The position numbers were made by a program, and so were the translations under genes. Shown piece by piece: positions 24,986 through 33,261 of a DNA stretch of 64,000 bases (positions are counted from its first letter, which is position 1; each line of letters opens with the position of its first letter). The notes beneath the pieces are model-generated. The model did not search any database. It saw only the letters and a list, made by a program, of their open reading frames with translations, and was not told where the DNA came from. Source of the stretch: Podarcis cretensis (Eukaryota); contig OX638158.1 of assembly GCA_951804945.1 (NCBI GenBank), forward strand, positions 41,044,001 through 41,108,000, read 5' to 3'.

Positions 24986-25975
24986 TAATGTCAAAGCATC
25001 ACCGCCAATTATTAGCTGCTCTGGGCTACACTTTGTAAGAGCCATCTTGCAGAAGACATGCACCCTGCCCTTTTTCTTCCCAACATGTGAAGTGTTTTCA
25101 AGATGAGCAGCGGCAAAACTGAAATAAAATCTGAGCGCAAAGTTTTAAAATGTCGCAGAAAGAAACTGAGCAGTCAATCTTCACTTTTCCTCTGGGAAAC
25201 TTCGAGCACACAGTTCACCATAACTCTTTAAGTGTGAACCCTATAAAGTTTGCCTCTGGGAATGCTGGTAATAAAGGCAATTCCATGCTGGGAGGAAATT
25301 GCATCATAGGGTTTCACCTCCACTCCAGCCCCACTTTGGCACAACCTCCCTCATCAGCCTTGCAGAAGCCTCATCAGATCAGGTTTTGCAGGCTCTCCTC
25401 ATCTTCGAGTCCAAAGGCAGGGGAACATGCCCATTTTCCCCGCTCACCTATTATTTTTCATTTTAAGAGGCATATCAAAGACTACTCTCTGACACTTAAT
25501 CACTTAGGGAAGGGAGGAGAGAATGAAATATGGCAGTGTAGAAAAAGAATCCCTTTAGAAGGCTTCAAAAGGTACAAGAAGAATTGCTGATACAGGCCAA
25601 CTGTCAGACAACTGCAATGCAGAAGATGTGGAACATTCATAATTTTATCTCTTTTCTGTAATTACTACACAACAAACCAACTCTCTCATTCAGTTAATAC
25701 CTCAGAAAAATATATCAAAGTCAGGAATTCTGCTGGCCGGCAATATACAGTTCAGTGGTTTCAGTTATTTCCCAAAATATTGCCGTGTTTTGTAGCAAGT
25801 GATTAAACGTTCACCCTTCAATAGACAAGAGTTTACATATTCAAACTCGCATTCATGAGAAACATATAGCTGCAATTACCGTATTTTTTGCACCATAACA
25901 CTCACTTTTTTCCTCCTAGAAAGTAAGTAAGAAAGTAATGTCTGTGCGTGTTATGGAGGGAATGCCTACGGGTGG

Positions 25976-26385
25976 TGTCAGGGAACTGCCATCGGAAGGA
26001 CAGGTGGTGAGAAGGCTTCAGGAGAATAGGAGAGACAATTCTTCAGCAGAAGAGGGAACCAGTAGGGGGAGTGCGGGAGCTCCAAAGGAAAGGGAGTCGG
26101 AGGGGAGGCTCTGGGATACTTCCAGTGAGAACAGCGAGGAGGTATCAGAACAGCTTTTAAGGACCCCCACCCCCCGCCGGAAACTGTCACGCAGGGAATC
26201 CAGGAGGCGCATGTCCGTGAAACAGCTTTTATGTTGGAAACGTTTCCGCAAACGCCCACTGTCAGATTCTACCAGCGACTGACGGAGCCATGCTGAAGGG
26301 CTCCGCTCAAGGCAGGGTTTCACTACACTGAGTGAGCTCTGAGGGATCCAGCTTCAACGCACAAGCAGCTCATCATCCCACCACA
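25976..26385 (+). repeat. 5' LTR (410 bp)
   Basis: Begins TGTCAGGGAAC, ends CCCACCACA; same sequence as 31077-31486 (offset 5101; the antisense ORF translations of both copies are identical). Confidence 0.97.
26227..26268 (+). promoter_or_regulatory. Predicted LTR core promoter/TSS (TATA-like TTTTATG about 30 bp upstream of the predicted +1 near 26258)
   Basis: The self-primer must be the 5' end of the transcript; TATA-like box spacing and a CCACT initiator-like context agree. Confidence 0.55.
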
Positions 26386-26387
26386 GC

Positions 26388-26398
26388 AATCTGACAGT
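26388..26398 (+). promoter_or_regulatory. Self-priming primer-binding site (Tf1-type)
   Basis: AATCTGACAGT, 2 nt after the 5' LTR, is the exact reverse complement of LTR bases 26258-26268 (ACTGTCAGATT); there is no TGG tRNA-type PBS. Confidence 0.85.
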
Positions 26399-26430
26399 CC
26401 CTGAAAGCAGCTTGTGCAAAGAGAGGCATC

Positions 26431-27445
26431 ATGAGCAACCCAGCCGGAGCCGGAGATGGGGGAGCAGCTGCAGCCGGTCCTAGCCTGGAAGAAAGGTACA
26501 GGATGTTGGAGGTACAGTTAGCTCTGCAAACGGCGAGGCTGGAGGAGAGGAGGGCTCATGATGCAGAAAAGGGGAAAGCCGCCCAGCTCTCGAGGAAAGT
26601 GCCAGGACTGGTGCAGAAGTTTGGGGGTGATCCCAGGAATTATCAAGCCTTCAGGACAGAGATGCAATATGCCCTCAATCTGCAGTTTGATGATTTTCCT
26701 GATGAGGATTCGAGGGTTGCTTATGTGATTGGGCATCTCGAAGGCGGGGCCAAAGATTGGGTGAGGCCACTAATGGCAGCCAATAATGAAGCCCTAAGGG
26801 ACACAAGGAAGTTTTTTCGCGCCATGGATCTGATGTTTTCCAGCGAGATTGAGCAGGGAGTGGCGCGCAGGCAGTTAATGGCGTGTAAACAAGGGAACCG
26901 ATCTGTCCGTGAGTACTGGACTGAGTTCACCATGTTGATCCATAAATTAGGATGGGATTTGTCAGCGGAACCGATACAAATGCTGTTCGAAGAAGGACTA
27001 TCTTCGGCAGTGAAAGACGAACTTTCCCGGGGGCCCAGGGCGGAGTCTATGGACCATCTGACTAAATCAGCGCTGGCCATAGGATCACGCCAGGAGGCCA
27101 GAGCCTTGGAGAAGCGGGAAGGGAAAGGGGAGCGTTGGAGGGATTTCCGCATTCCAGAGATGCCAGAGCAGCCTTCTCTGCCAGCAGAGCCGATGGAAAT
27201 CGGAACAGCGCGCGCGCGCGCAATTTCAAACCCCAGTGAAAGGGCGGAAGAAGGAGGGAAAAGGCGCCAAGAAATGTTTTCTCTGCCAACAGCCAGGTCA
27301 TTTTGCCAGAGTTTGTCCGCAAAGAAAGGAATGGCAAGGAATGGCGGGAGCTGTTGGGGAGGAGGGAGAAGGAGCTAAGGAGCAAGTAAAAGCCAACGCC
27401 TGGCTGCCACCGACGGGGCACAGCAGCCAGGCCAAGGAACAGTAA
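26431..27445 (+). CDS. gag: Gag (retrotransposon capsid domain plus CCHC zinc knuckle), interrupted by a frame break near 27208-27235
   Basis: ORF 26431-27378 encodes capsid motifs (KFGGDP...FPDEDSRVAYVIGHLEGGAKDW; MHR-like KQGNRSVREYWTEF) and EPMEIG. The CX2CX4HX4C knuckle CFLCQQPGHFARVC lies in the +1 frame (27236-27445). Confidence 0.9.
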
Positions 27446-30400
27446 ATGTGCCCACGCCAGAACCCCCAAGACCAGCTCTTGTAATAGAGGTATTGCTGGA
27501 GCTGGCAAACGGACACCCACTAAAAGTGAAGGCGCTATTAGACTCAGGCAGCTCCTGCAACTTTATGAGTAAGGAGTTTGCAGCCGCCCATCAGATACAG
27601 ACCATTCCTTTAAAAAATCCCCTGCAGGTGACCACGATTGATGGGAGGGCTCTGTTGGGGGGAGAAGTAGACCAGCAGACTGTCCCCATGACAATGAGGG
27701 TAGCAAGACACACGGAACGGATAGCGTTTAATATAGCCACGTTGGGAGGAGCGCCCGTCATTTTGGGGATGAGCTGGCTAGCGCTGCATGATCCGCTTGT
27801 GGGATGGCATCAGAGAGTGGTTTCCTTTGGGTCAGCACATTGTATGGGACACTGCACAGAAAAAGGGGGCCAAGTAGGCACTCAGGCCACGTTAGCAAAG
27901 ATAGAAGCAATGGATCAAGGTAGGGTACCACGACAATATGCAGATTTTGCCGACGTCTTCAGCGAAAGGGAAGCAGATAAACTACCCCCGCACAGACCCT
28001 TTGACTGCCAAATCAACTTACTTCCAGGAGCGCAATTGCCAGTGGGCAAGGTGTATGCAATGTCTGACAGAGAGATGCAGGAGCTAAGGGAGTTTATTGA
28101 CAAAAACCTCAAGCGTGGGTTCATCAGGGAGTCACGAGCGGTGGGGGGTAGCCCAGTGTTCTTTGTAGACAAAAAAAACTCGGACAAACCGAGATTAATT
28201 GTGGATTTCAGGGCCCTAAACGCAGTGTCCGAACCCGTGAGCTTCCCTATGCCCAGAATCGATGACATTCTGACCCGGGTGAGAAAAGGGAAGATTTTTA
28301 CCAAGCTGGACCTGAGGGGGGCGTATAACCTGATACGTATGAGAAAGGGAGATGAGTGGAAAACCACTATGTTCACCCCCTTGGGGGCATTTGAGTACTG
28401 CGTTATGCCTTTCGGCCTCCAGGCGGGTTCAGCAGTATTTCAATCATTCATGAATCACGTACTAGGACCATTGCTGTACAAGAACTGCGCTGCGTTCTTG
28501 GACGATGTACTGGTGTACTCAGAGGATGAAGAGCAGCATGTGCGAGATGTACGAGAAGTACTGAGCAAACTGCAAGAAAACCAGCTGTGGGTGAAACTGG
28601 AGAAGTGTCAGTTTCACACCAGGGAGGTGGAATTCCTTGGGTACCGGTTGTCGGACAAGGGGCTGGCCATGGATCCTAGCAAGGTGCAAGCGGTGCTGGA
28701 ATGGAGGCCACCGAAAACTAAGAAAGATGTGCAGAGGTTTTTGGGGTTCGGAAACTTCTATCGGAAGTTCATCAAGAACTTCGCCCATTTAACAGCCCCC
28801 ATCACGGATTGTCTCAGCAGTAAGAAGAAATTTGTCTGGACGGAAGAAGCGCAGCGAGCTTTCGAAAGTTTAAAGAGGGCGTTTGCTTCGGAAGAACAAC
28901 TCTTACAGGTGGATCTGCAGCAGCCGATGAGGGTGGAAACCGACGCGTCTGACAGAGCGGTGGGCGCCGTGCTCCTGCAGCCAGGAGCGAATACGTCGGA
29001 ATGGAGGCCGTGTGCCTTCTTCTCGAGGAAATTGAACAAGTCTGAGAGGAATTATACAGTGTACGACAGAGAATTACTCGCTGTCCACGAAGCATTCAAG
29101 AGATGGAGACACCTGTTGATTGGGGCGCAACACAAGGTTCAAGTGCGGACAGACCACAAAAATCTAGAATACTGGAGAACAGCCCGAGTATTGAACCAGA
29201 GACAAGTAAGATGGGCGCAAGAGTTCTCCAAGTTCAATTTTGAAATTCGCTACGTACCAGGGGCTGAGAATGTCAGGGCGGACGCTCTCTCCAGAAAACC
29301 TGAGTACTTGGAGGGGGAAGGAGGGGCGGAAGAAAGACATATCATCTCAGAGGACCACTGGGTTTGTGGGGCGGCATTGGTGGGGCAAAGAGAACTGGTA
29401 GAGGGTATTGAAAACGATGAATATGCCCAAGAGAAACTTAGGGAACTCAGGGAGACAGGTGAGAACGCAGGGGGGTTTGAGGAAAAGAACGGAAAACTAT
29501 ATTACAAAGGGGCGCTCTACATACCAGGTGGGGAACTAAGAGGGCGGGTGCTTAAACAGTTGCATGACAGCCCCACGGCGGGGCACTTCGGGCAGCACAA
29601 GACCATGTGGTTGGTTACCAGGGAGTTTTGGTGGCCCAAGGTGCGGGAAGACGTGCGGGAGTATGTCAGGGGATGCGACAGGTGCCAAAGAGCAAAGGGA
29701 GAGAGGTTGGCGCCAGCAGGGTTATTAGAACCATTACCCACCCCAGAAAGGCCATGGGAGATGGTATCCATAGACTTCATGACCGATCTACCGAGATCCA
29801 AAGGGAAAACCGCGGTCATGGTGGTGGTAGATCTACTAACTAAGATGTGCCACTTTATAGCTTGTTCACATGCAGTGACAGCGGAAGAAACCGCAAGGTT
29901 GTTTGTGGAGCACATTTTTAGGTTGCATGGCGCCCCCTTGATGGTTTTGAGCGACAGAGGAAAACAATTTACTTCTAGGTTCTGGAGGAAACTAATGAGC
30001 ATGTTGCATGTGGAGGTAAGTTTTTCCACCGCCAGGCACCCAGAAACAAATGGGCAAGCAGAAAGGGCAAACGGGGTTTTGCAACAATATCTGAGGTGTT
30101 ATGTAAAGGACAGAGAAACTGATTGGGTAGACTGGTTACCTCTGGCAGAATTTGCCTACAACAACGCGGAGAACGTGTCCACAGGGATGAGTCCCTTTCT
30201 AGCCAATTATGGGTGTCATCCTCGGGCGTTTCCAGGAGAGGGCGGGGGAAGGTGGAGTGTACCTGCAGCGGAAAATTTTGTTGAAGAGATGGAAGCGATC
30301 CACCGTCAGCTCCAACTCAACTTAGAGAAAGCCAAAGAAGAATATAAGAAGCAAGCAGACAGAAATAGGAGGGAAGGCGAAACCATAAGGGTGGGTAACC

Positions 30401-31383
30401 GGGTGTGGCTCTCCACCCAAGGACTGCCGTTCAAGGGAGGGTGTAAGAAATTGAGACCCAAACGGTTGGGACCCTTTGAGGTCATACAGCAGGTCAACCC
30501 AGTAGCATTCAAACTCCGATTGCCCAGTCACATGAAATTGCACCCAGTATTTCACAGGTCATTACTGTCGCCATACAGAGAGGGGTGTGAGTGGGGGGAA
30601 CATGAGAGGGAGGTCACCCGGACACCCGTCATAGAAGAGAGAGAACGCAACATGGATGTGGCAGGGATCATTGATTCCAGATGGAAGGGGAATCAGGTGG
30701 AATACTTGGTAGAATGGGAGGGGGAGGAAGAGTCAGAAAACACATGGGTACCGGCAGAGGAAGTCAAAGACGAGATTTTAATAGAAACGTTTCATCGGCG
30801 TTTCCCAAGGAAACCACAACCAGTGGCAAGGTTTAGGAGGGAACACTTCGGGACTACAGATGAGGAAGGGGAGTTTGAAGGGTTCCCAGAGTCGGGAGTG
30901 GAGGTGGAAACAGATTCCGACGAAGGAGAGGAAGAGGGGGAAAGAGGCGGAAGGCCGTGGTTAGAAGTGTTTGAATCCTCGGAGGATGAGGGGAGTTCCT
31001 TCCAGGGATTTCCGTCCTCGCCGCCAGTAAGAGAAGAGGCGGGAGGGGGTGAAGGGGGCCCTGGGGGGGAGGTGGATGTCAGGGAACTGCCATCGGAAGG
31101 ACAGGTGGTGAGAAGGCTTCAGGAGAATAGGAGAGACAATTCTTCAGCAGAAGAGGGAACCAGTAGGGGGAGTGCGGGAGCTCCAAAGGAAAGGGAGTCG
31201 GAGGGGAGGCTCTGGGATACTTCCAGTGAGAACAGCGAGGAGGTATCAGAACAGCTTTTAAGGACCCCCACCCCCCGCCGGAAACTGTCACGCAGGGAAT
31301 CCAGGAGGCGCATGTCCGTGAAACAGCTTTTATGTTGGAAACGTTTCCGCAAACGCCCACTGTCAGATTCTACCAGCGACTGA
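27379..31383 (+). CDS. pol: Pol polyprotein: aspartic protease, RT, RNase H, integrase, chromodomain and long C-terminal tail; probably made as a Gag-Pol fusion by -1 frameshift
   Basis: Open frame from 27379 with no stop. Motifs: LLDSG (27541), AFLDDVLVY (28495), VETDASD/DRELLAV/TDHKNL/ADALSR, HHCC (HDSPTAGH...CDRC), D-D-E (SIDF, LSDRG, QAERAN), GPF, and chromodomain YLVEWEG...NTWVP (about 30652-30807). Confidence 0.96.
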   Translation, partial: GASKSQRLAATDGAQQPGQGTVNVPTPEPPRPALVIEVLLELANGHPLKVKALLDSGSSCNFMSKEFAAAHQIQTIPLKNPLQVTTIDGRALLGGEVDQQTVPMTMRVARHTERIAFNIATLGGAPVILGMSWLALHDPLVGWHQRVVSFGSAHCMGHCTEKGGQVGTQATLAKIEAMDQGRVPRQYADFADVFSEREADKLPPHRPFDCQINLLPGAQLPVGKVYAMSDREMQELREFIDKNLKRGFIRESRAVGGSPVFFVDKKNSDKPRLIVDFRALNAVSEPVSFPMPRIDDILTRVRKGKIFTKLDLRGAYNLIRMRKGDEWKTTMFTPLGAFEYCVMPFGLQAGSAVFQSFMNHVLGPLLYKNCAAFLDDVLVYSEDEEQHVRDVREVLSKLQENQLWVKLEKCQFHTREVEFLGYRLSDKGLAMDPSKVQAVLEWRPPKTKKDVQRFLGFGNFYRKFIKNFAHLTAPITDCLSSKKKFVWTEEAQRAFESLKRAFASEEQLLQVDLQQPMRVETDASDRAVGAVLLQPGANTSEWRPCAFFSRKLNKSERNYTVYDRELLAVHEAFKRWRHLLIGAQHKVQVRTDHKNLEYWRTARVLNQRQVRWAQEFSKFNFEIRYVPGAENVRADALSRKPEYLEGEGGAEERHIISEDHWVCGAALVGQRELVEGIENDEYAQEKLRELRETGENAGGFEEKNGKLYYKGALYIPGGELRGRVLKQLHDSPTAGHFGQHKTMWLVTREFWWPKVREDVREYVRGCDRCQRAKGERLAPAGLLEPLPTPERPWEMVSIDFMTDLPRSKGKTAVMVVVDLLTKMCHFIACSHAVTAEETARLFVEHIFRLHGAPLMVLSDRGKQFTSRFWRKLMSMLHVEVSFSTARHPETNGQAERANGVLQQYLRCYVKDRETDWVDWLPLAEFAYNNAENVSTGMSPFLANYGCHPRAFPGEGGGRWSVPAAENFVEEMEAIHRQLQLNLEKAKEEYKKQADRNRREGETIRVGNRVWLSTQGLPFKGGCKKLRPKRLGPFEVIQQVNPVAFKLRLPSHMKLHPVFHRSLLSPYREGCEWGEHEREVTRTPVIEERERNMDVAGIIDSRWKGNQVEYLVEWEGEEESENTWVPAEEVKDEILIETFHRRFPRKPQPVARFRREHFGTTDEEGEFEGFPESGVEVETDSDEGEEEGERGGRPWLEVFESSEDEGSSFQGFPSSPPVREEAGGGEGGPGGEVDVRELPSEGQVVRRLQENRRDNSSAEEGTSRGSAGAPKERESEGRLWDTSSENSEEVSEQLLRTPTPRRKLSRRESRRRMSVKQLLCWKRFRKRPLSDSTSD
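27385..27453 (+). promoter_or_regulatory. Programmed -1 frameshift signal: H-type pseudoknot
   Basis: Stem 1 GCCTGGCTGC (27398-27407)/GCAGCCAGGC (27423-27432); stem 2 GGGCACA (27416-27422)/TGTGCCC (27447-27453); lies in the overlap where pol is -1 relative to the zinc-knuckle frame. Confidence 0.75.
31063..31076 (+). other. Polypurine tract
   Basis: GGGGGGGAGGTGGA immediately 5' of the 3' LTR. Confidence 0.8.
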
Positions 31384-31486
31384 CGGAGCCATGCTGAAGG
31401 GCTCCGCTCAAGGCAGGGTTTCACTACACTGAGTGAGCTCTGAGGGATCCAGCTTCAACGCACAAGCAGCTCATCATCCCACCACA
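31077..31486 (+). repeat. 3' LTR (410 bp), overlapped by the last 101 codons of pol
   Basis: Direct repeat of the 5' LTR, followed by the GGTGG TSD. Confidence 0.97.
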
Positions 31487-33261
31487 GGTGGCATGCCTAC
31501 GGATTTTCCTCCTCTAAAAACTACATGCGTGTTATGGTCGGGTGCGTGTTATAGAGCGAAAAATACGGTAATTCTTTGTTAGACAAACCATTCTGAAGCT
31601 GTTGAGTAAACAAAAGCAATTTATACTTGTTGCTTCTGAAGCTGCATATTACTCAATAGTGTAGGGAAATAGTGTTTCTTAGTTGTGTTGTATTGGAAAC
31701 TTATGTTGCAAAGTCTGTGAGAAGAGCTGAGTTTGGTTTGGAAAGGGGGGGGAAGGGGATTAATTTCTGTTTGTCACACAAAATGTTAAAAAGCACGGGA
31801 GGTTTTAAGAGAAGCAAGTTGGTAATACACTTAACAACATACTACAGGTAGATCTGTTAGCAGCCTTTAGGCACAGATAATTATATCTGGATGCATGATA
31901 CTGGGTACTCAGATAGGTAGTTATGAGTAAAAGCCATACGCTTTTAAATTACTACCTAGTATTCCCACAAAGGAGATGCCAAGTTGACTACTTATCATAA
32001 TGGGCTCTTGGTCAAACAAAGTATACCATTTTGAAAATAGCAAATTATTGAAGGCAATGGTTTGCTCACAGCACTGGCAATAAAGTTATTATTTGTACCA
32101 GGAGCAGAGCATTAGGCACAAATACTTAGAGCTAACAAGAATGAAAACAATGAGAGGCTACTATACTCTTGCACTAATCCTACATCTGCCTTTCCATAAG
32201 TCAGATAATAATAAAAAAAAAATACGTAGCTTCAACACCATAAAAATAAGCTGTGGGTGTCAAAAATATTGAAGATCAATATTTTCCTCCTTGAAACTGT
32301 CAAAGTATACTAAAACACATTTTTCTAAACATATGCTTTGCCCAGTATATAGCACTGTCAAAGTGTCTAGACTGCGGTTTCTCAGTAACCCAGATTTAGA
32401 TTAGATTCATATCATCATTTAGCACTTTTTTCTGCCAGGAATAGAAATGAAACTCCACTTGAGTTTTTGCTCTTATCCTGTCAGTGTACTACTAAGCATC
32501 GATTCCAAGTTTCTCTTCATCATAAGCCATTCCAAGCTTATCCTTCTGCGTGAAAGAATAACCTGCTCCTTTACAGATTGTGTCAAAGGATCTCCTGATA
32601 TGGTAGCAGATAGTTGGTTATTTTCATTTTCAGTTTTACAAAGCCAGAGACATACAACATTCATTTATCCTTCCAATCAAGGCCACTTAGCACTTTTAAA
32701 AGCTTAGAAGAGTAGAAATGTGGCACATTGTATTAATCAGAAAAGCTAAATCTACTGACTATTCCATTTCCTCAACATCAAATCTAAGGAAGAATATGAT
32801 TATCTTAGCTTTCTGGTCATGAAAGCATTCTTTTTTTAAGTCTAAGTTATGTGTGACAATAAATATTTCAGAAAACAATATATTGCATTTTAGGGTGACT
32901 CTCTTAAAAGTCTGCTTACAGCAATTAATATTTATAAGATTTCTTACCCACCTTCCACCATAATGTCCCAGGGTGGGTTACAACAAGAGAATATACCATT
33001 ATAAAAACAAGTAATACCATTATCATTTAAAGCACATAAATAAGATAGCGAACAGAAATTAAACAAAGAACTAGCAAATTAACCAAAGTATTAGCAAATA
33101 AGCCAAATAATTTCACCAGTAAAAAGTTAACGAATAATTTTAAATGTTTTTAAGAACTGCTGTATGTACCACCTGGATCATGGAGTCCAAACATGTGGGG
33201 CCACCATCAAAAAGCCCCTGATACCTACCAACCTGATGGTTCTTCCTTAATGGTGGGTAAA

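What the first reader, a model, noticed from the sequence alone, without database searches (positions are those of the whole stretch)
30829..31011. Retrotransposon integrase tail carries two tandem LEDGF/TND-binding-like FxGF motifs (possible host-motif mimicry for integration targeting)
Seen: right after the chromodomain, Pol encodes RFRREHF-GTTDEEGE-FEGF (FEGF at 30874-30885) and WLEVF-ESSEDEGSS-FQGF (FQGF at 31000-31011), separated by an acidic linker. Both have the same layout: a putative short helix ending in Phe, an acidic Ser/Thr spacer with CK2-type sites, then F-x-G-F. Established: this is the layout of integrase-binding-domain motifs / TND-interacting motifs (TIMs). JPO2/CDCA7L, IWS1, MLL1/KMT2A and POGZ use such motifs to bind the IBD of LEDGF/p75 and HRP2 and other TFIIS N-terminal domains, with affinity raised by CK2 phosphorylation. 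Lentiviral integrase uses the same LEDGF domain through a different surface. Inference: this gypsy lineage may have evolved a bivalent TIM to tether its intasome to LEDGF/HRP2 or elongation-factor TNDs and so integrate into transcribed (H3K36me) gene bodies. I know of no description of this for an LTR retrotransposon. Caveat: neither motif has the Glu at -2 of the strict (D/E)xExFxGF consensus.
Basis: partly seen in the sequence, partly recalled or inferred. Interest (0 to 1): 0.9.

Follow-up and report, generated by a model that had tools for sequence, protein, structure and literature searches.

The report
Conserved FxGF motifs in lizard integrase tail
A young lizard gypsy-type retrotransposon carries, just after its integrase chromodomain, two conserved helix / acidic linker / F-x-G-F motifs built like the host peptides that dock onto the chromatin reader LEDGF, so it may copy a host motif to choose where it inserts; binding itself is untested.

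Summary
Pol (27448-31383) of an LTR element with identical LTRs encodes FEGF (30874-30885) and FQGF (31000-31011) in a disordered acidic tail after the chromodomain.

The motifs look selected, not accidental:
- Two F.GF occur in 0.07% of tail shuffles.
- In seven lineages of one integrase clade (99% support), only 10 of 78 internal-tail columns are invariant. Five of them are W1171, F1175, F1185, G1187 and F1188, the helix anchors and FxGF of unit 2.
- The most distant lineage that keeps unit 2 matches 10/18 residues there but 2/24 in the spacer.
- A sister family keeps unit 1 with identical spacing.
- No tail of at least 25 aa outside the clade has the motif.
- Differences seen in contigs from other organisms are 15/24 synonymous, against 27% expected.

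Both units fit the published TND-interacting motif: helix, 8-9 residue acidic Ser/Thr linker with CK2-type sites, then FxGF.

Two additions. The clade's chromodomain lacks the first and third aromatic cage residues. Pol also reads through the polypurine tract into U3.

Binding to LEDGF/HRP2 and any gene-body insertion bias are untested. I found no prior description in the literature searched.

The parts
25976..26385 (+). 5' LTR (410 nt, TG...CA), flanked by the 5-bp target-site duplication GGTGG at 25971-25975
   Evidence: Direct repeat, 100% identical to 31077-31486. Flanks read.
26258..26268 (+). 11-nt stretch in the LTR complementary to the stretch just after the LTR (26388-26398): a Tf1-type self-priming pair. 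It marks the likely U3/R border.
   Evidence: Exact reverse-complement match found. There is no TGG-type tRNA primer site after the LTR.
26431..27378 (+). gag ORF (315 aa), ending in a TAA that is in frame with pol
   Evidence: Pfam Retrotrans_gag and Ty3_capsid. Sequence read.
27448..31383 (+). pol ORF: protease, RT, RNase H, integrase (zinc finger, core, SH3), chromodomain, 193-aa tail
30658..30801 (+). Chromodomain (aa 1071-1118). It lacks the first (Met) and third (Glu) aromatic cage residues, so it is type II-like.
   Evidence: Pfam PF00385, E 8e-10. Cage positions compared with 77 chromovirus chromodomains. Type I/II definition from PMC3059260.
30823..30849 (+). Unit 1 helix, aa 1126-1134 (VARFRREHF)
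   Evidence: AlphaFold2 helix, 10-residue block mean pLDDT 84 falling to 62. F1129 and F1134 are kept in the sister family P0011 at the same spacing.
30850..30873 (+). Unit 1 linker, aa 1135-1142 (GTTDEEGE, 8 residues). T1136 and T1137 are followed by Asp/Glu at +3 (CK2-type).
   Evidence: TTD[DE]E is invariant in the seven rows win, P0001-3, P0009, P0161 and P0162.
30874..30885 (+). Unit 1 FEGF, aa 1143-1146
   Evidence: Relatives read LEGF, MEGF, FVGF, FEGF and FQGF. It is lost in P0007 and reads FEEF in the truncated P0161.
30886..30957 (+). Acidic spacer between the units, aa 1147-1170, poorly conserved and with indels
   Evidence: 2-8 of 24 residues identical between the window and P0007, P0162 and P0009.
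30958..30972 (+). Unit 2 anchor W-L-E-V-F, aa 1171-1175
   Evidence: W1171 and F1175 are invariant in 7 lineages. AlphaFold2 gives only a 3-residue helix at low confidence.
30973..30999 (+). Unit 2 linker, aa 1176-1184 (ESSEDEGSS, 9 residues). S1177 and S1178 are CK2-type sites.
31000..31011 (+). Unit 2 FQGF, aa 1185-1188
   Evidence: F, G and F are invariant in 7 lineages, while the x position reads Q, R or L. The only listed nucleotide difference in these codons changes x from Q to R.
31030..31076 (+). Purine-rich stretch ending at the LTR border (polypurine tract), lying inside the Pol reading frame
   Evidence: The peptide it encodes (GGEGGPGGEVDV) is the best-conserved part of the tail, as expected for a cis-acting site.
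31077..31486 (+). 3' LTR, with target-site duplication GGTGG at 31487-31491
31077..31383 (+). LTR-encoded end of Pol (102 codons through U3 into the start of R), including a predicted helix VKQLLCWKR (31318-31344)
   Evidence: The frame is open only in this phase. The same end is kept in P0001, P0003 and P0009, and LLCWKR is also in P0007. 6 of 9 listed differences are synonymous, and there is an in-frame 3-nt deletion in another organism. Helix.

Best explanation
The element is a young Ty3/gypsy chromovirus of a lacertid lizard. Its integrase ends in a long disordered tail. The tail carries two related short linear motifs, each built as W/F-containing helix, then an 8-9 residue acidic Ser/Thr linker, then F-x-G-F. 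Selection maintains both. The most likely function is mimicry of host TND-interacting motifs (the LEDGF/HRP2 IBD-binding type). On this reading the tail, probably after CK2 phosphorylation of the linkers, docks the integrase or intasome onto LEDGF/HRP2, or another TFIIS-N-terminal-domain protein, on transcribed chromatin. Two units would give bivalent binding. The chromodomain has lost two of its three aromatic cage residues in exactly this clade, which fits a shift of targeting from the chromodomain to the tail. Shown here: the motifs, their conservation, coding constraint on the tail, predicted disorder and helices, and the degenerate cage. Inferred: the partner, the role of phosphorylation and any effect on integration sites.
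For: - Motif presence and rarity.
- Conservation: in 7 lineages only 10 of 78 internal-tail columns are invariant. Four belong to the FPxKPxP end of the chromodomain region, one is G1145 of unit 1, and five are W1171, F1175, F1185, G1187 and F1188.
- Window versus P0007: 10/18 identical in the unit 2 block, against 2/24 in the spacer and 2/18 in the unit 1 block.
- The sister family P0011/P0155/P0156 keeps aromatic helix, 8-residue linker and FQGF at the same distance from the chromodomain.
- All motif-bearing sequences form one clade on an integrase tree built without the chromodomain and tail (99% SH-like support).
- No tail of at least 25 aa outside the clade has F.GF.
- Coding constraint: 15 of 24 listed differences in contigs of other organisms are synonymous, against 27% expected (p = 3e-4). 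None falls in an F, G or F codon.
- AlphaFold2: a disordered tail with a helix at aa 1126-1134 and a short one at 1173-1175.
- Fit to the published definition: obligate helix with F/V/L/I anchors, acidic linker of 8-16 residues rich in D/E, G and S/T that CK2 phosphorylates, and an FxGF that is essential for LEDGF and HRP2 partners (PMC9987994).
- The FxGF/LEDGF-domain interaction is conserved as far as Drosophila (JIL-1/JASPer, PMC6877644).
- The aromatic cage is degenerate only in this clade plus two other sequences.
Against: - No binding test of any kind was possible.
- The window copy lacks Glu at -2 of the strict (D/E)xExFxGF consensus in both units.
- The unit 2 helix is predicted only weakly.
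- Unit 1 is lost in P0007, and the first Phe is Leu or Met in three subfamilies.
- The P0011 family linker is Ser/Thr-rich but not acidic.
- All named relatives come from one lizard genus, and the two unnamed contigs have no organism on record, so the phylogenetic depth is that of one transposon clade.
- Cage loss and tail gain coincide on a single branch, so that is one event, not a replicated correlation.
- Type II chromodomains in plants can still localise elements, so a degenerate cage does not show loss of function (PMC3059260).
- Acidic-aromatic peptides can also bind other partners such as histones.
Confidence: 0.45

Rival explanations
1. The motifs are real, selected short linear motifs but bind something other than a TND. 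Candidates are histones (acidic-aromatic anchor peptides of the kind histone chaperones use), another host nuclear factor, or a surface of the element's own integrase or Gag (regulation or assembly).
For: The conservation and coding constraint show function but not the partner. The tail is very acidic, with aromatic anchors. W-x-x-x-F plus an acidic run is not unique to TIMs (own knowledge).
Against: The full three-part layout, with the published linker length and an FxGF kept with a free x position, is specific to the LEDGF/HRP2-type TIM. AlphaFold2 of chromodomain plus tail shows no confident docking of either FxGF on the chromodomain (10-residue block mean pLDDT 43-54 there).
Confidence: 0.33
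2. There is no specific function. The FxGF strings are inherited by recent common descent in a low-complexity acidic tail, and their apparent conservation is chance.
For: All relatives belong to one clade. Short motifs arise easily in disordered regions. The finding was picked after the fact from a large scan.
Against: The tail outside the motifs has diverged to about 10% identity with indels, while W, F, F, G and F stay fixed. There is an excess of synonymous differences. Shuffle probability is 6.5e-4. The x position varies freely while F, G and F do not.
Confidence: 0.17
3. The conservation reflects a nucleic-acid constraint near the polypurine tract (a cis-acting RNA or DNA signal), not the peptide.
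For: The motifs lie 65-200 nt upstream of the PPT and LTR border. The PPT-encoded peptide and the self-primer-encoded C-terminus are indeed conserved for cis reasons.
Against: Synonymous changes occur inside and next to the motif blocks (30873, 30981, 31014, 31020). The middle codon of FxGF changes at its second base (Q/R/L). Leu, Met and Phe alternate at one position. This is a protein-level pattern.
Confidence: 0.05

Closest known systems
TND-interacting motifs / LEDGF IBD-binding motifs of host proteins (KMT2A/MLL1, JPO2/CDCA7L, IWS1, POGZ, MED1, ASK, DPF3a; Drosophila JIL-1)
   Same: A disordered region with a short helix bearing hydrophobic anchors, an acidic Ser/Thr/Gly linker of 8-9 residues carrying CK2-type sites, then FxGF. 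Two units lie in series, as in JPO2 and ASK (PMC9987994; PMC6877644).
   Different: The motif is carried by a retrotransposon integrase, not a cellular transcription factor. The window copy lacks Glu at -2. Binding is not shown.
Lentiviral integrase / LEDGF p75 tethering
   Same: The proposed outcome is the same: an integrase tethered through the LEDGF IBD to H3K36me-marked transcribed chromatin.
   Different: Lentiviral integrase binds the IBD through its folded catalytic-core dimer interface (own knowledge). Here a linear motif in the C-terminal tail would occupy the groove used by cellular partners.
Integrase C-terminal peptide tethers: Ty5 targeting domain/Sir4, MLV integrase tail/BET ET domain, Ty1 integrase/AC40 (PMC7459421), HTLV-1 integrase/PP2A-B56 (bioRxiv 10.64898/2026.05.01.722153)
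   Same: A short peptide in the disordered end of integrase that copies a host docking motif and decides the integration site. Ty5 is also switched by phosphorylation (own knowledge; for Ty1 and HTLV-1).
   Different: A different motif class and a different predicted partner. None of these uses a TIM.
POGZ, a pogo-transposase-derived host protein that binds the LEDGF IBD
   Same: An FxGF-type motif attached to a transposase-derived DDE domain. This shows that mobile-element proteins can carry the motif (titles and abstracts; own knowledge).
   Different: POGZ is a domesticated DNA-transposon gene. No active element and no LTR retrotransposon has been reported with the motif in the literature searched.
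Plant CRM group A chromoviruses
   Same: [quoted passage not shown] Plant chromoviruses also have cage-less (type II) chromodomains (PMC3059260).
   Different: Those are plant elements, the CR motif is unrelated in sequence, and the target is centromeric.

Membership tests
TND-interacting motif (TIM), LEDGF/HRP2 IBD-binding subtype | Lies in an intrinsically disordered region | tested here: met
   AlphaFold2 with 11 aligned sequences: 10-residue block mean pLDDT stays below 60 from about aa 1141 to the end of the tail, with no tertiary packing.
TND-interacting motif (TIM), LEDGF/HRP2 IBD-binding subtype | Obligate short alpha-helix with F/V/L/I anchor residues upstream of the linker | tested here: inconclusive
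   Unit 1: a helix is predicted at aa 1126-1134 (block mean pLDDT 84 falling to 62). Unit 2: only 3 helical residues at low confidence, although W1171 and F1175 are invariant.
TND-interacting motif (TIM), LEDGF/HRP2 IBD-binding subtype | Acidic, Gly/Ser/Thr-rich linker of 8-16 residues | tested here: met
   The linkers are 8 residues (GTTDEEGE) and 9 residues (ESSEDEGSS). Length range from PMC9987994.
TND-interacting motif (TIM), LEDGF/HRP2 IBD-binding subtype | FxGF motif (essential for all known LEDGF/HRP2 partners) | tested here: met
   FEGF and FQGF are present. In unit 2, F, G and F are invariant in 7 lineages.
TND-interacting motif (TIM), LEDGF/HRP2 IBD-binding subtype | Strict consensus (D/E)-x-E-x-F-x-G-F | tested here: not met
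   The window copy has Gly (unit 1) and Ser (unit 2) at -2. Relatives P0009 and P0162 meet it in unit 1, and P0001 and P0003 meet it with Leu in place of the first Phe. The consensus is as quoted in the finding and recalled; the source paper was not held.
TND-interacting motif (TIM), LEDGF/HRP2 IBD-binding subtype | CK2-type phosphorylation sites in the linker | tested here: met
   At sequence level only: T1136, T1137, S1177 and S1178 each have Asp/Glu at +3 and are conserved as [ST][ST]-acidic. Phosphorylation itself was not tested.
TND-interacting motif (TIM), LEDGF/HRP2 IBD-binding subtype | Physical, Phe-dependent binding to a TFIIS N-terminal domain | not testable with these tools
No TND sequence was available, so no job was sent.
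Chromovirus (Ty3/gypsy with integrase chromodomain) | PR-RT-RNase H-IN order with a chromodomain at the integrase C-terminus, LTRs and a target-site duplication | tested here: met
   Pfam domains. Identical 410-nt LTRs and a 5-bp duplication.
Type I (canonical) chromovirus chromodomain | Three aromatic cage residues (HP1 Y24/W45/Y48 positions) | tested here: not met
   The window has Met, Trp and Glu at these positions. Among 77 related chromodomains, 62 have an aromatic first residue and 64 an aromatic or His third residue. The FxGF clade has E or T at the third, and the P0011 family also has R at the second. HP1 numbering is from memory.

The most novel reading that the evidence does not exclude
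A vertebrate LTR retrotransposon clade has replaced methyl-lysine reading by its chromodomain with mimicry of a host transcription-elongation docking motif. A bivalent, CK2-switchable TIM in the integrase tail binds the LEDGF/HRP2 IBD and steers integration into H3K36-methylated gene bodies. This would be convergent with lentiviruses but would use the groove that cellular partners use.
Probability: 0.35. Interest if true: 0.85.

Novelty: new variant of a known kind. Interest (0 to 1): 0.7.

Why it matters
Integrases are known to pick their sites by docking on host chromatin proteins, and lentiviruses use LEDGF. If a retrotransposon reaches the same reader by copying the linear motif of LEDGF's cellular partners, three things follow.
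- It would be a second, independent route to the same tether.
- It would be a natural example of host-motif mimicry by a transposon.
- It would show a chromovirus changing its target from heterochromatin-type marks to transcribed chromatin.

It would also extend the TND/TIM interaction network to mobile elements. The idea is directly testable with peptides and with insertion maps of lacertid genomes, where the family is young and abundant.

Tried and rejected
Contig differences from read laying were used instead. That list is truncated and mixes paralogous copies.
- The three homologous-protein searches found few relatives, nearly all from Podarcis muralis. The exhaustive representative search added two unnamed contig-derived proteins and the P0011 family.
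- phmmer of the internal tail against PDB chains gave only a chance acidic match to BOP1 (E 0.59).
- ESM Atlas gave no usable hit.
- Three source papers on the motif (PMC6065015, PMC8943916, 10.1038/ncomms8968) are not held, so known TIM sequences could not be aligned. The review PMC9987994 was used.
- Pfam on five flanking ORFs found nothing, so whether this insertion lies in a gene cannot be said.
- A first tree attempt with a mixture model was killed by the memory limit. The FastTree run was used.
- I considered the idea that the open frame is only a by-product of T-poor sequence and rejected it. The other two frames carry several stops, and differences are biased to synonymous sites.
Full report
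**1. What is there**

The finding lies inside a complete LTR retrotransposon at 25976-31486.
- Two 410-nt LTRs (25976-26385 and 31077-31486) are 100% identical. They start with TG, end with CA, and are flanked by a 5-bp duplication, GGTGG.
- Between them lie a gag ORF (26431-27378; Retrotrans_gag, Ty3 capsid) and a pol ORF (27448-31383).
- Pol carries protease, reverse transcriptase, RNase H, the integrase zinc finger, core and SH3 domains, and a chromodomain at aa 1071-1118.
- It is therefore a chromovirus of the Ty3/gypsy group.
- Its closest database relatives are polyproteins of the wall lizard Podarcis muralis.
- Only one copy is in the window.

**2. The observation**

- After the chromodomain come RFRREHF-GTTDEEGE-FEGF (FEGF at 30874-30885) and, 42 residues on, PWLEVF-ESSEDEGSS-FQGF (FQGF at 31000-31011).
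- Two or more F.GF occur in 0.065% of shuffles of the 193-aa tail and 0.43% of shuffles of its 91-aa internal part.
- In 160,427 residues of other gypsy polyproteins collected here, F.GF in an acidic context occurs once.

- The motifs sit just upstream of the polypurine tract.
- Pol then reads on for 102 codons through U3.
- It stops about 25 nt after the 11-nt stretch (31359-31369 in the 3' LTR) whose complement forms a Tf1-type self-priming site after the 5' LTR.
- The other two frames of this region are closed by several stops.

**3. Is the tail a real protein segment?**

- Relatives P0001, P0003 and P0009 keep the same frame to the same end.
- Logan contigs from four other (coded) organisms were laid on 30568-31486. 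Of the 24 listed differences inside the tail, 15 are synonymous, against 27% expected (binomial p = 3e-4).
- Split by part, that is 9 of 15 in the internal part and 6 of 9 in the U3-encoded part.
- One listed indel there is an in-frame 3-nt deletion.
- Caveats: the table is truncated (20 rows not shown), contigs of a multi-copy family mix paralogues, and two differences share a codon.
- With these limits, the tail looks protein-coding and constrained, including the part inside the LTR.
- A precedent exists in plants: CRM group A chromoviruses encode their putative targeting motif in the 3' LTR (PMC3059260).

**4. Are the motifs conserved?**

- The exhaustive search with the integrase-to-end segment and the word-based searches gave these relatives with tails: P0001-3, P0161 and P0162 (Podarcis), P0009 (Logan contig), P0007 (ENA contig), and the family P0011/P0155/P0156 (Podarcis).
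- On a tree of the integrase without chromodomain and tail, win, P0002, P0003, P0007 and P0011 form one clade with 99% SH-like support. Path lengths from the window copy are 0.62 (P0007) and 0.96 (P0011) changes per site.
- In the alignment, seven lineages share only 10 invariant columns among the 78 internal-tail columns.
  - Four are the FPxKPxP end of the chromodomain region.
  - One is G1145 of unit 1.
  - Five are W1171, F1175, F1185, G1187 and F1188, which are the two helix anchors and the F, G, F of unit 2.
- Against P0007, the window copy is 10/18 identical in the unit 2 block but 2/24 in the spacer, 2/18 in the unit 1 block and 1/10 after the motif.
- The x of FxGF varies (E/V in unit 1; Q/R/L in unit 2).
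- Unit 1 is kept in seven rows, with F, L or M at the first position. One truncated copy, P0161, reads FEEF. Unit 1 is lost in P0007.
- In the P0011 family unit 1 is present with the same spacing from the chromodomain (aromatic helix, 8-residue Ser/Thr linker, FQGF), followed by an acidic stretch and LSGF.
- The two units resemble each other most clearly in P0009 (9 of 21 identical in register), which suggests an internal duplication.
- No tail of 25 residues or more outside the clade contains [FLIMVWY].GF near the chromodomain.
- No listed nucleotide difference falls in an F, G or F codon of either motif. The only one inside a motif turns Q1186 into R.

**5. Structure**

- AlphaFold2 on the chromodomain plus tail with 10 relatives gives a confident chromodomain.
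- It gives a helix at aa 1126-1134 (VARFRREHF; 10-residue block mean pLDDT 84 falling to 62).
- It gives a 3-residue helical turn at aa 1173-1175 (low confidence) and a helix at aa 1291-1299 (VKQLLCWKR).
- The rest is predicted disordered.
- Neither FxGF docks confidently on the chromodomain.

**6. Comparison with the known motif**

The review of the TFIIS N-terminal domain (PMC9987994) defines TIMs in three parts.
- An obligate helix that anchors through F/V/L/I.
- An acidic linker of 8-16 residues, rich in D/E, Gly and Ser/Thr, that CK2 phosphorylates.
- An FxGF that is optional in general but present and essential in all known LEDGF and HRP2 partners.

Several proteins carry two or three TIMs in series. 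The FxGF/LEDGF-domain contact is conserved in Drosophila (JIL-1/JASPer, PMC6877644).

Both units here fit.
- The linkers are 8 and 9 residues.
- T1136, T1137, S1177 and S1178 have an acidic residue at +3.
- FxGF is present.
- The strict (D/E)xExFxGF form is not met by the window copy, but it is met in unit 1 of P0009 and P0162.
- Membership in the functional sense, meaning binding a TND, could not be tested.

**7. An added observation: the chromodomain**

- At the three aromatic cage positions (HP1 Y24, W45, Y48; numbering from memory), 77 related chromovirus chromodomains mostly have Y/F/W, W and Y/F.
- The window copy has Met, Trp and Glu.
- All members of the FxGF clade have E or T at the third position, and the P0011 family also has Arg at the second.
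- This is the type II pattern described for plant chromoviruses (PMC3059260).
- Loss of the cage and gain of the tail map to the same branch, so this counts as one event. It fits a move of the targeting function to the tail but does not prove it.

**8. Mechanism proposed, and rivals**

- Most likely (about 0.45): the tail mimics host TIMs and tethers the integrase to LEDGF/HRP2 or another TND protein on transcribed chromatin, with CK2 phosphorylation raising affinity and two units giving avidity.
- Rival (about 0.33): a selected motif with another partner, such as histones, another nuclear factor, or the element's own proteins.
- Rival (about 0.17): no specific function.
- Rival (about 0.05): a nucleic-acid constraint.
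- The last two are disfavoured by the pattern of fixed key residues against a free x, a diverged spacer and the synonymous excess.

**9. Novelty**

- Full-text searches for LEDGF/retrotransposon/FxGF, TND/TIM/integrase, LEDGF/PogZ/transposase, LTR retrotransposon/short linear motif/tethering, and FxGF alone found no description of such a motif in an LTR retrotransposon.
- The library lacks most subscription journals, so this is not proof of absence.
- The kind of thing is known: a peptide tether in the integrase tail (Ty5, MLV, Ty1, HTLV-1).
- The motif class and the predicted partner would be new for a retrotransposon.

**10. Limits**

- Complex prediction was not used, for lack of an admissible TND sequence.
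- Other first-stage notes on this genome report the same motif in other copies, the U3-encoded tail and the self-priming site. These are not independent evidence. The last two were checked here on this copy.

Noticed in passing
window 26258-26268 and 26388-26398: An 11-nt stretch just after the 5' LTR is the exact reverse complement of an LTR stretch. This looks like Tf1-type self-priming, and there is no tRNA-type primer site. It places the U3/R border near 26258.
   Followed up: partly
window 31077-31383: Pol reads through the polypurine tract and all of U3 and stops early in R. The U3-encoded peptide is conserved, shows mostly synonymous differences, and contains a predicted helix, VKQLLCWKR, followed by a basic patch. 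The last residues (PLSDS) are encoded by the self-primer, so their conservation may be a cis effect.
   Followed up: partly
window 30658-30801: The chromodomain lacks the first and third aromatic cage residues (Met and Glu). This is a type II-like chromodomain in a vertebrate chromovirus, and the pattern is shared only by the FxGF-tail clade and two other sequences (P0020, P0114).
   Followed up: partly
window 27376-27378: A single TAA, in frame, separates gag from pol, and the 69 nt after it are open in the same frame. I did not resolve whether this is programmed readthrough or a break in this copy.
   Followed up: no
window 25850-25975 and 31487-31581: The insertion site lies inside another repeat. 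Both flanks share short stretches (ATGCCTACGG, GCGTGTTATGG), and CGTATTTTTCGG on the left is mirrored by CGAAAAATACGG on the right.
   Followed up: no
P0004: A Podarcis muralis gene model named vomeronasal type-2 receptor 26-like contains an integrase fragment about 80% identical to this element. It is probably a chimeric annotation or an exonised copy.
   Followed up: no
P0008, P0010: Two very long polyproteins from the green alga Haematococcus lacustris are among the best-scoring matches to the lizard integrase (40-41% identity), ahead of amphibian and fish chromoviruses.
   Followed up: no
window 30812-31041 and 30895-31033, run X13: In one organism where the family is very abundant, rare contigs skip 228 nt (in frame, removing both motifs) or 137 nt of the internal tail. 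These are minor deletion variants.
   Followed up: no
runs X8, X9: Two small runs guessed to be RNA from the main host organism hold about a third of the sampled words of the chromodomain-tail-LTR stretch, which hints at expression.
   Followed up: no
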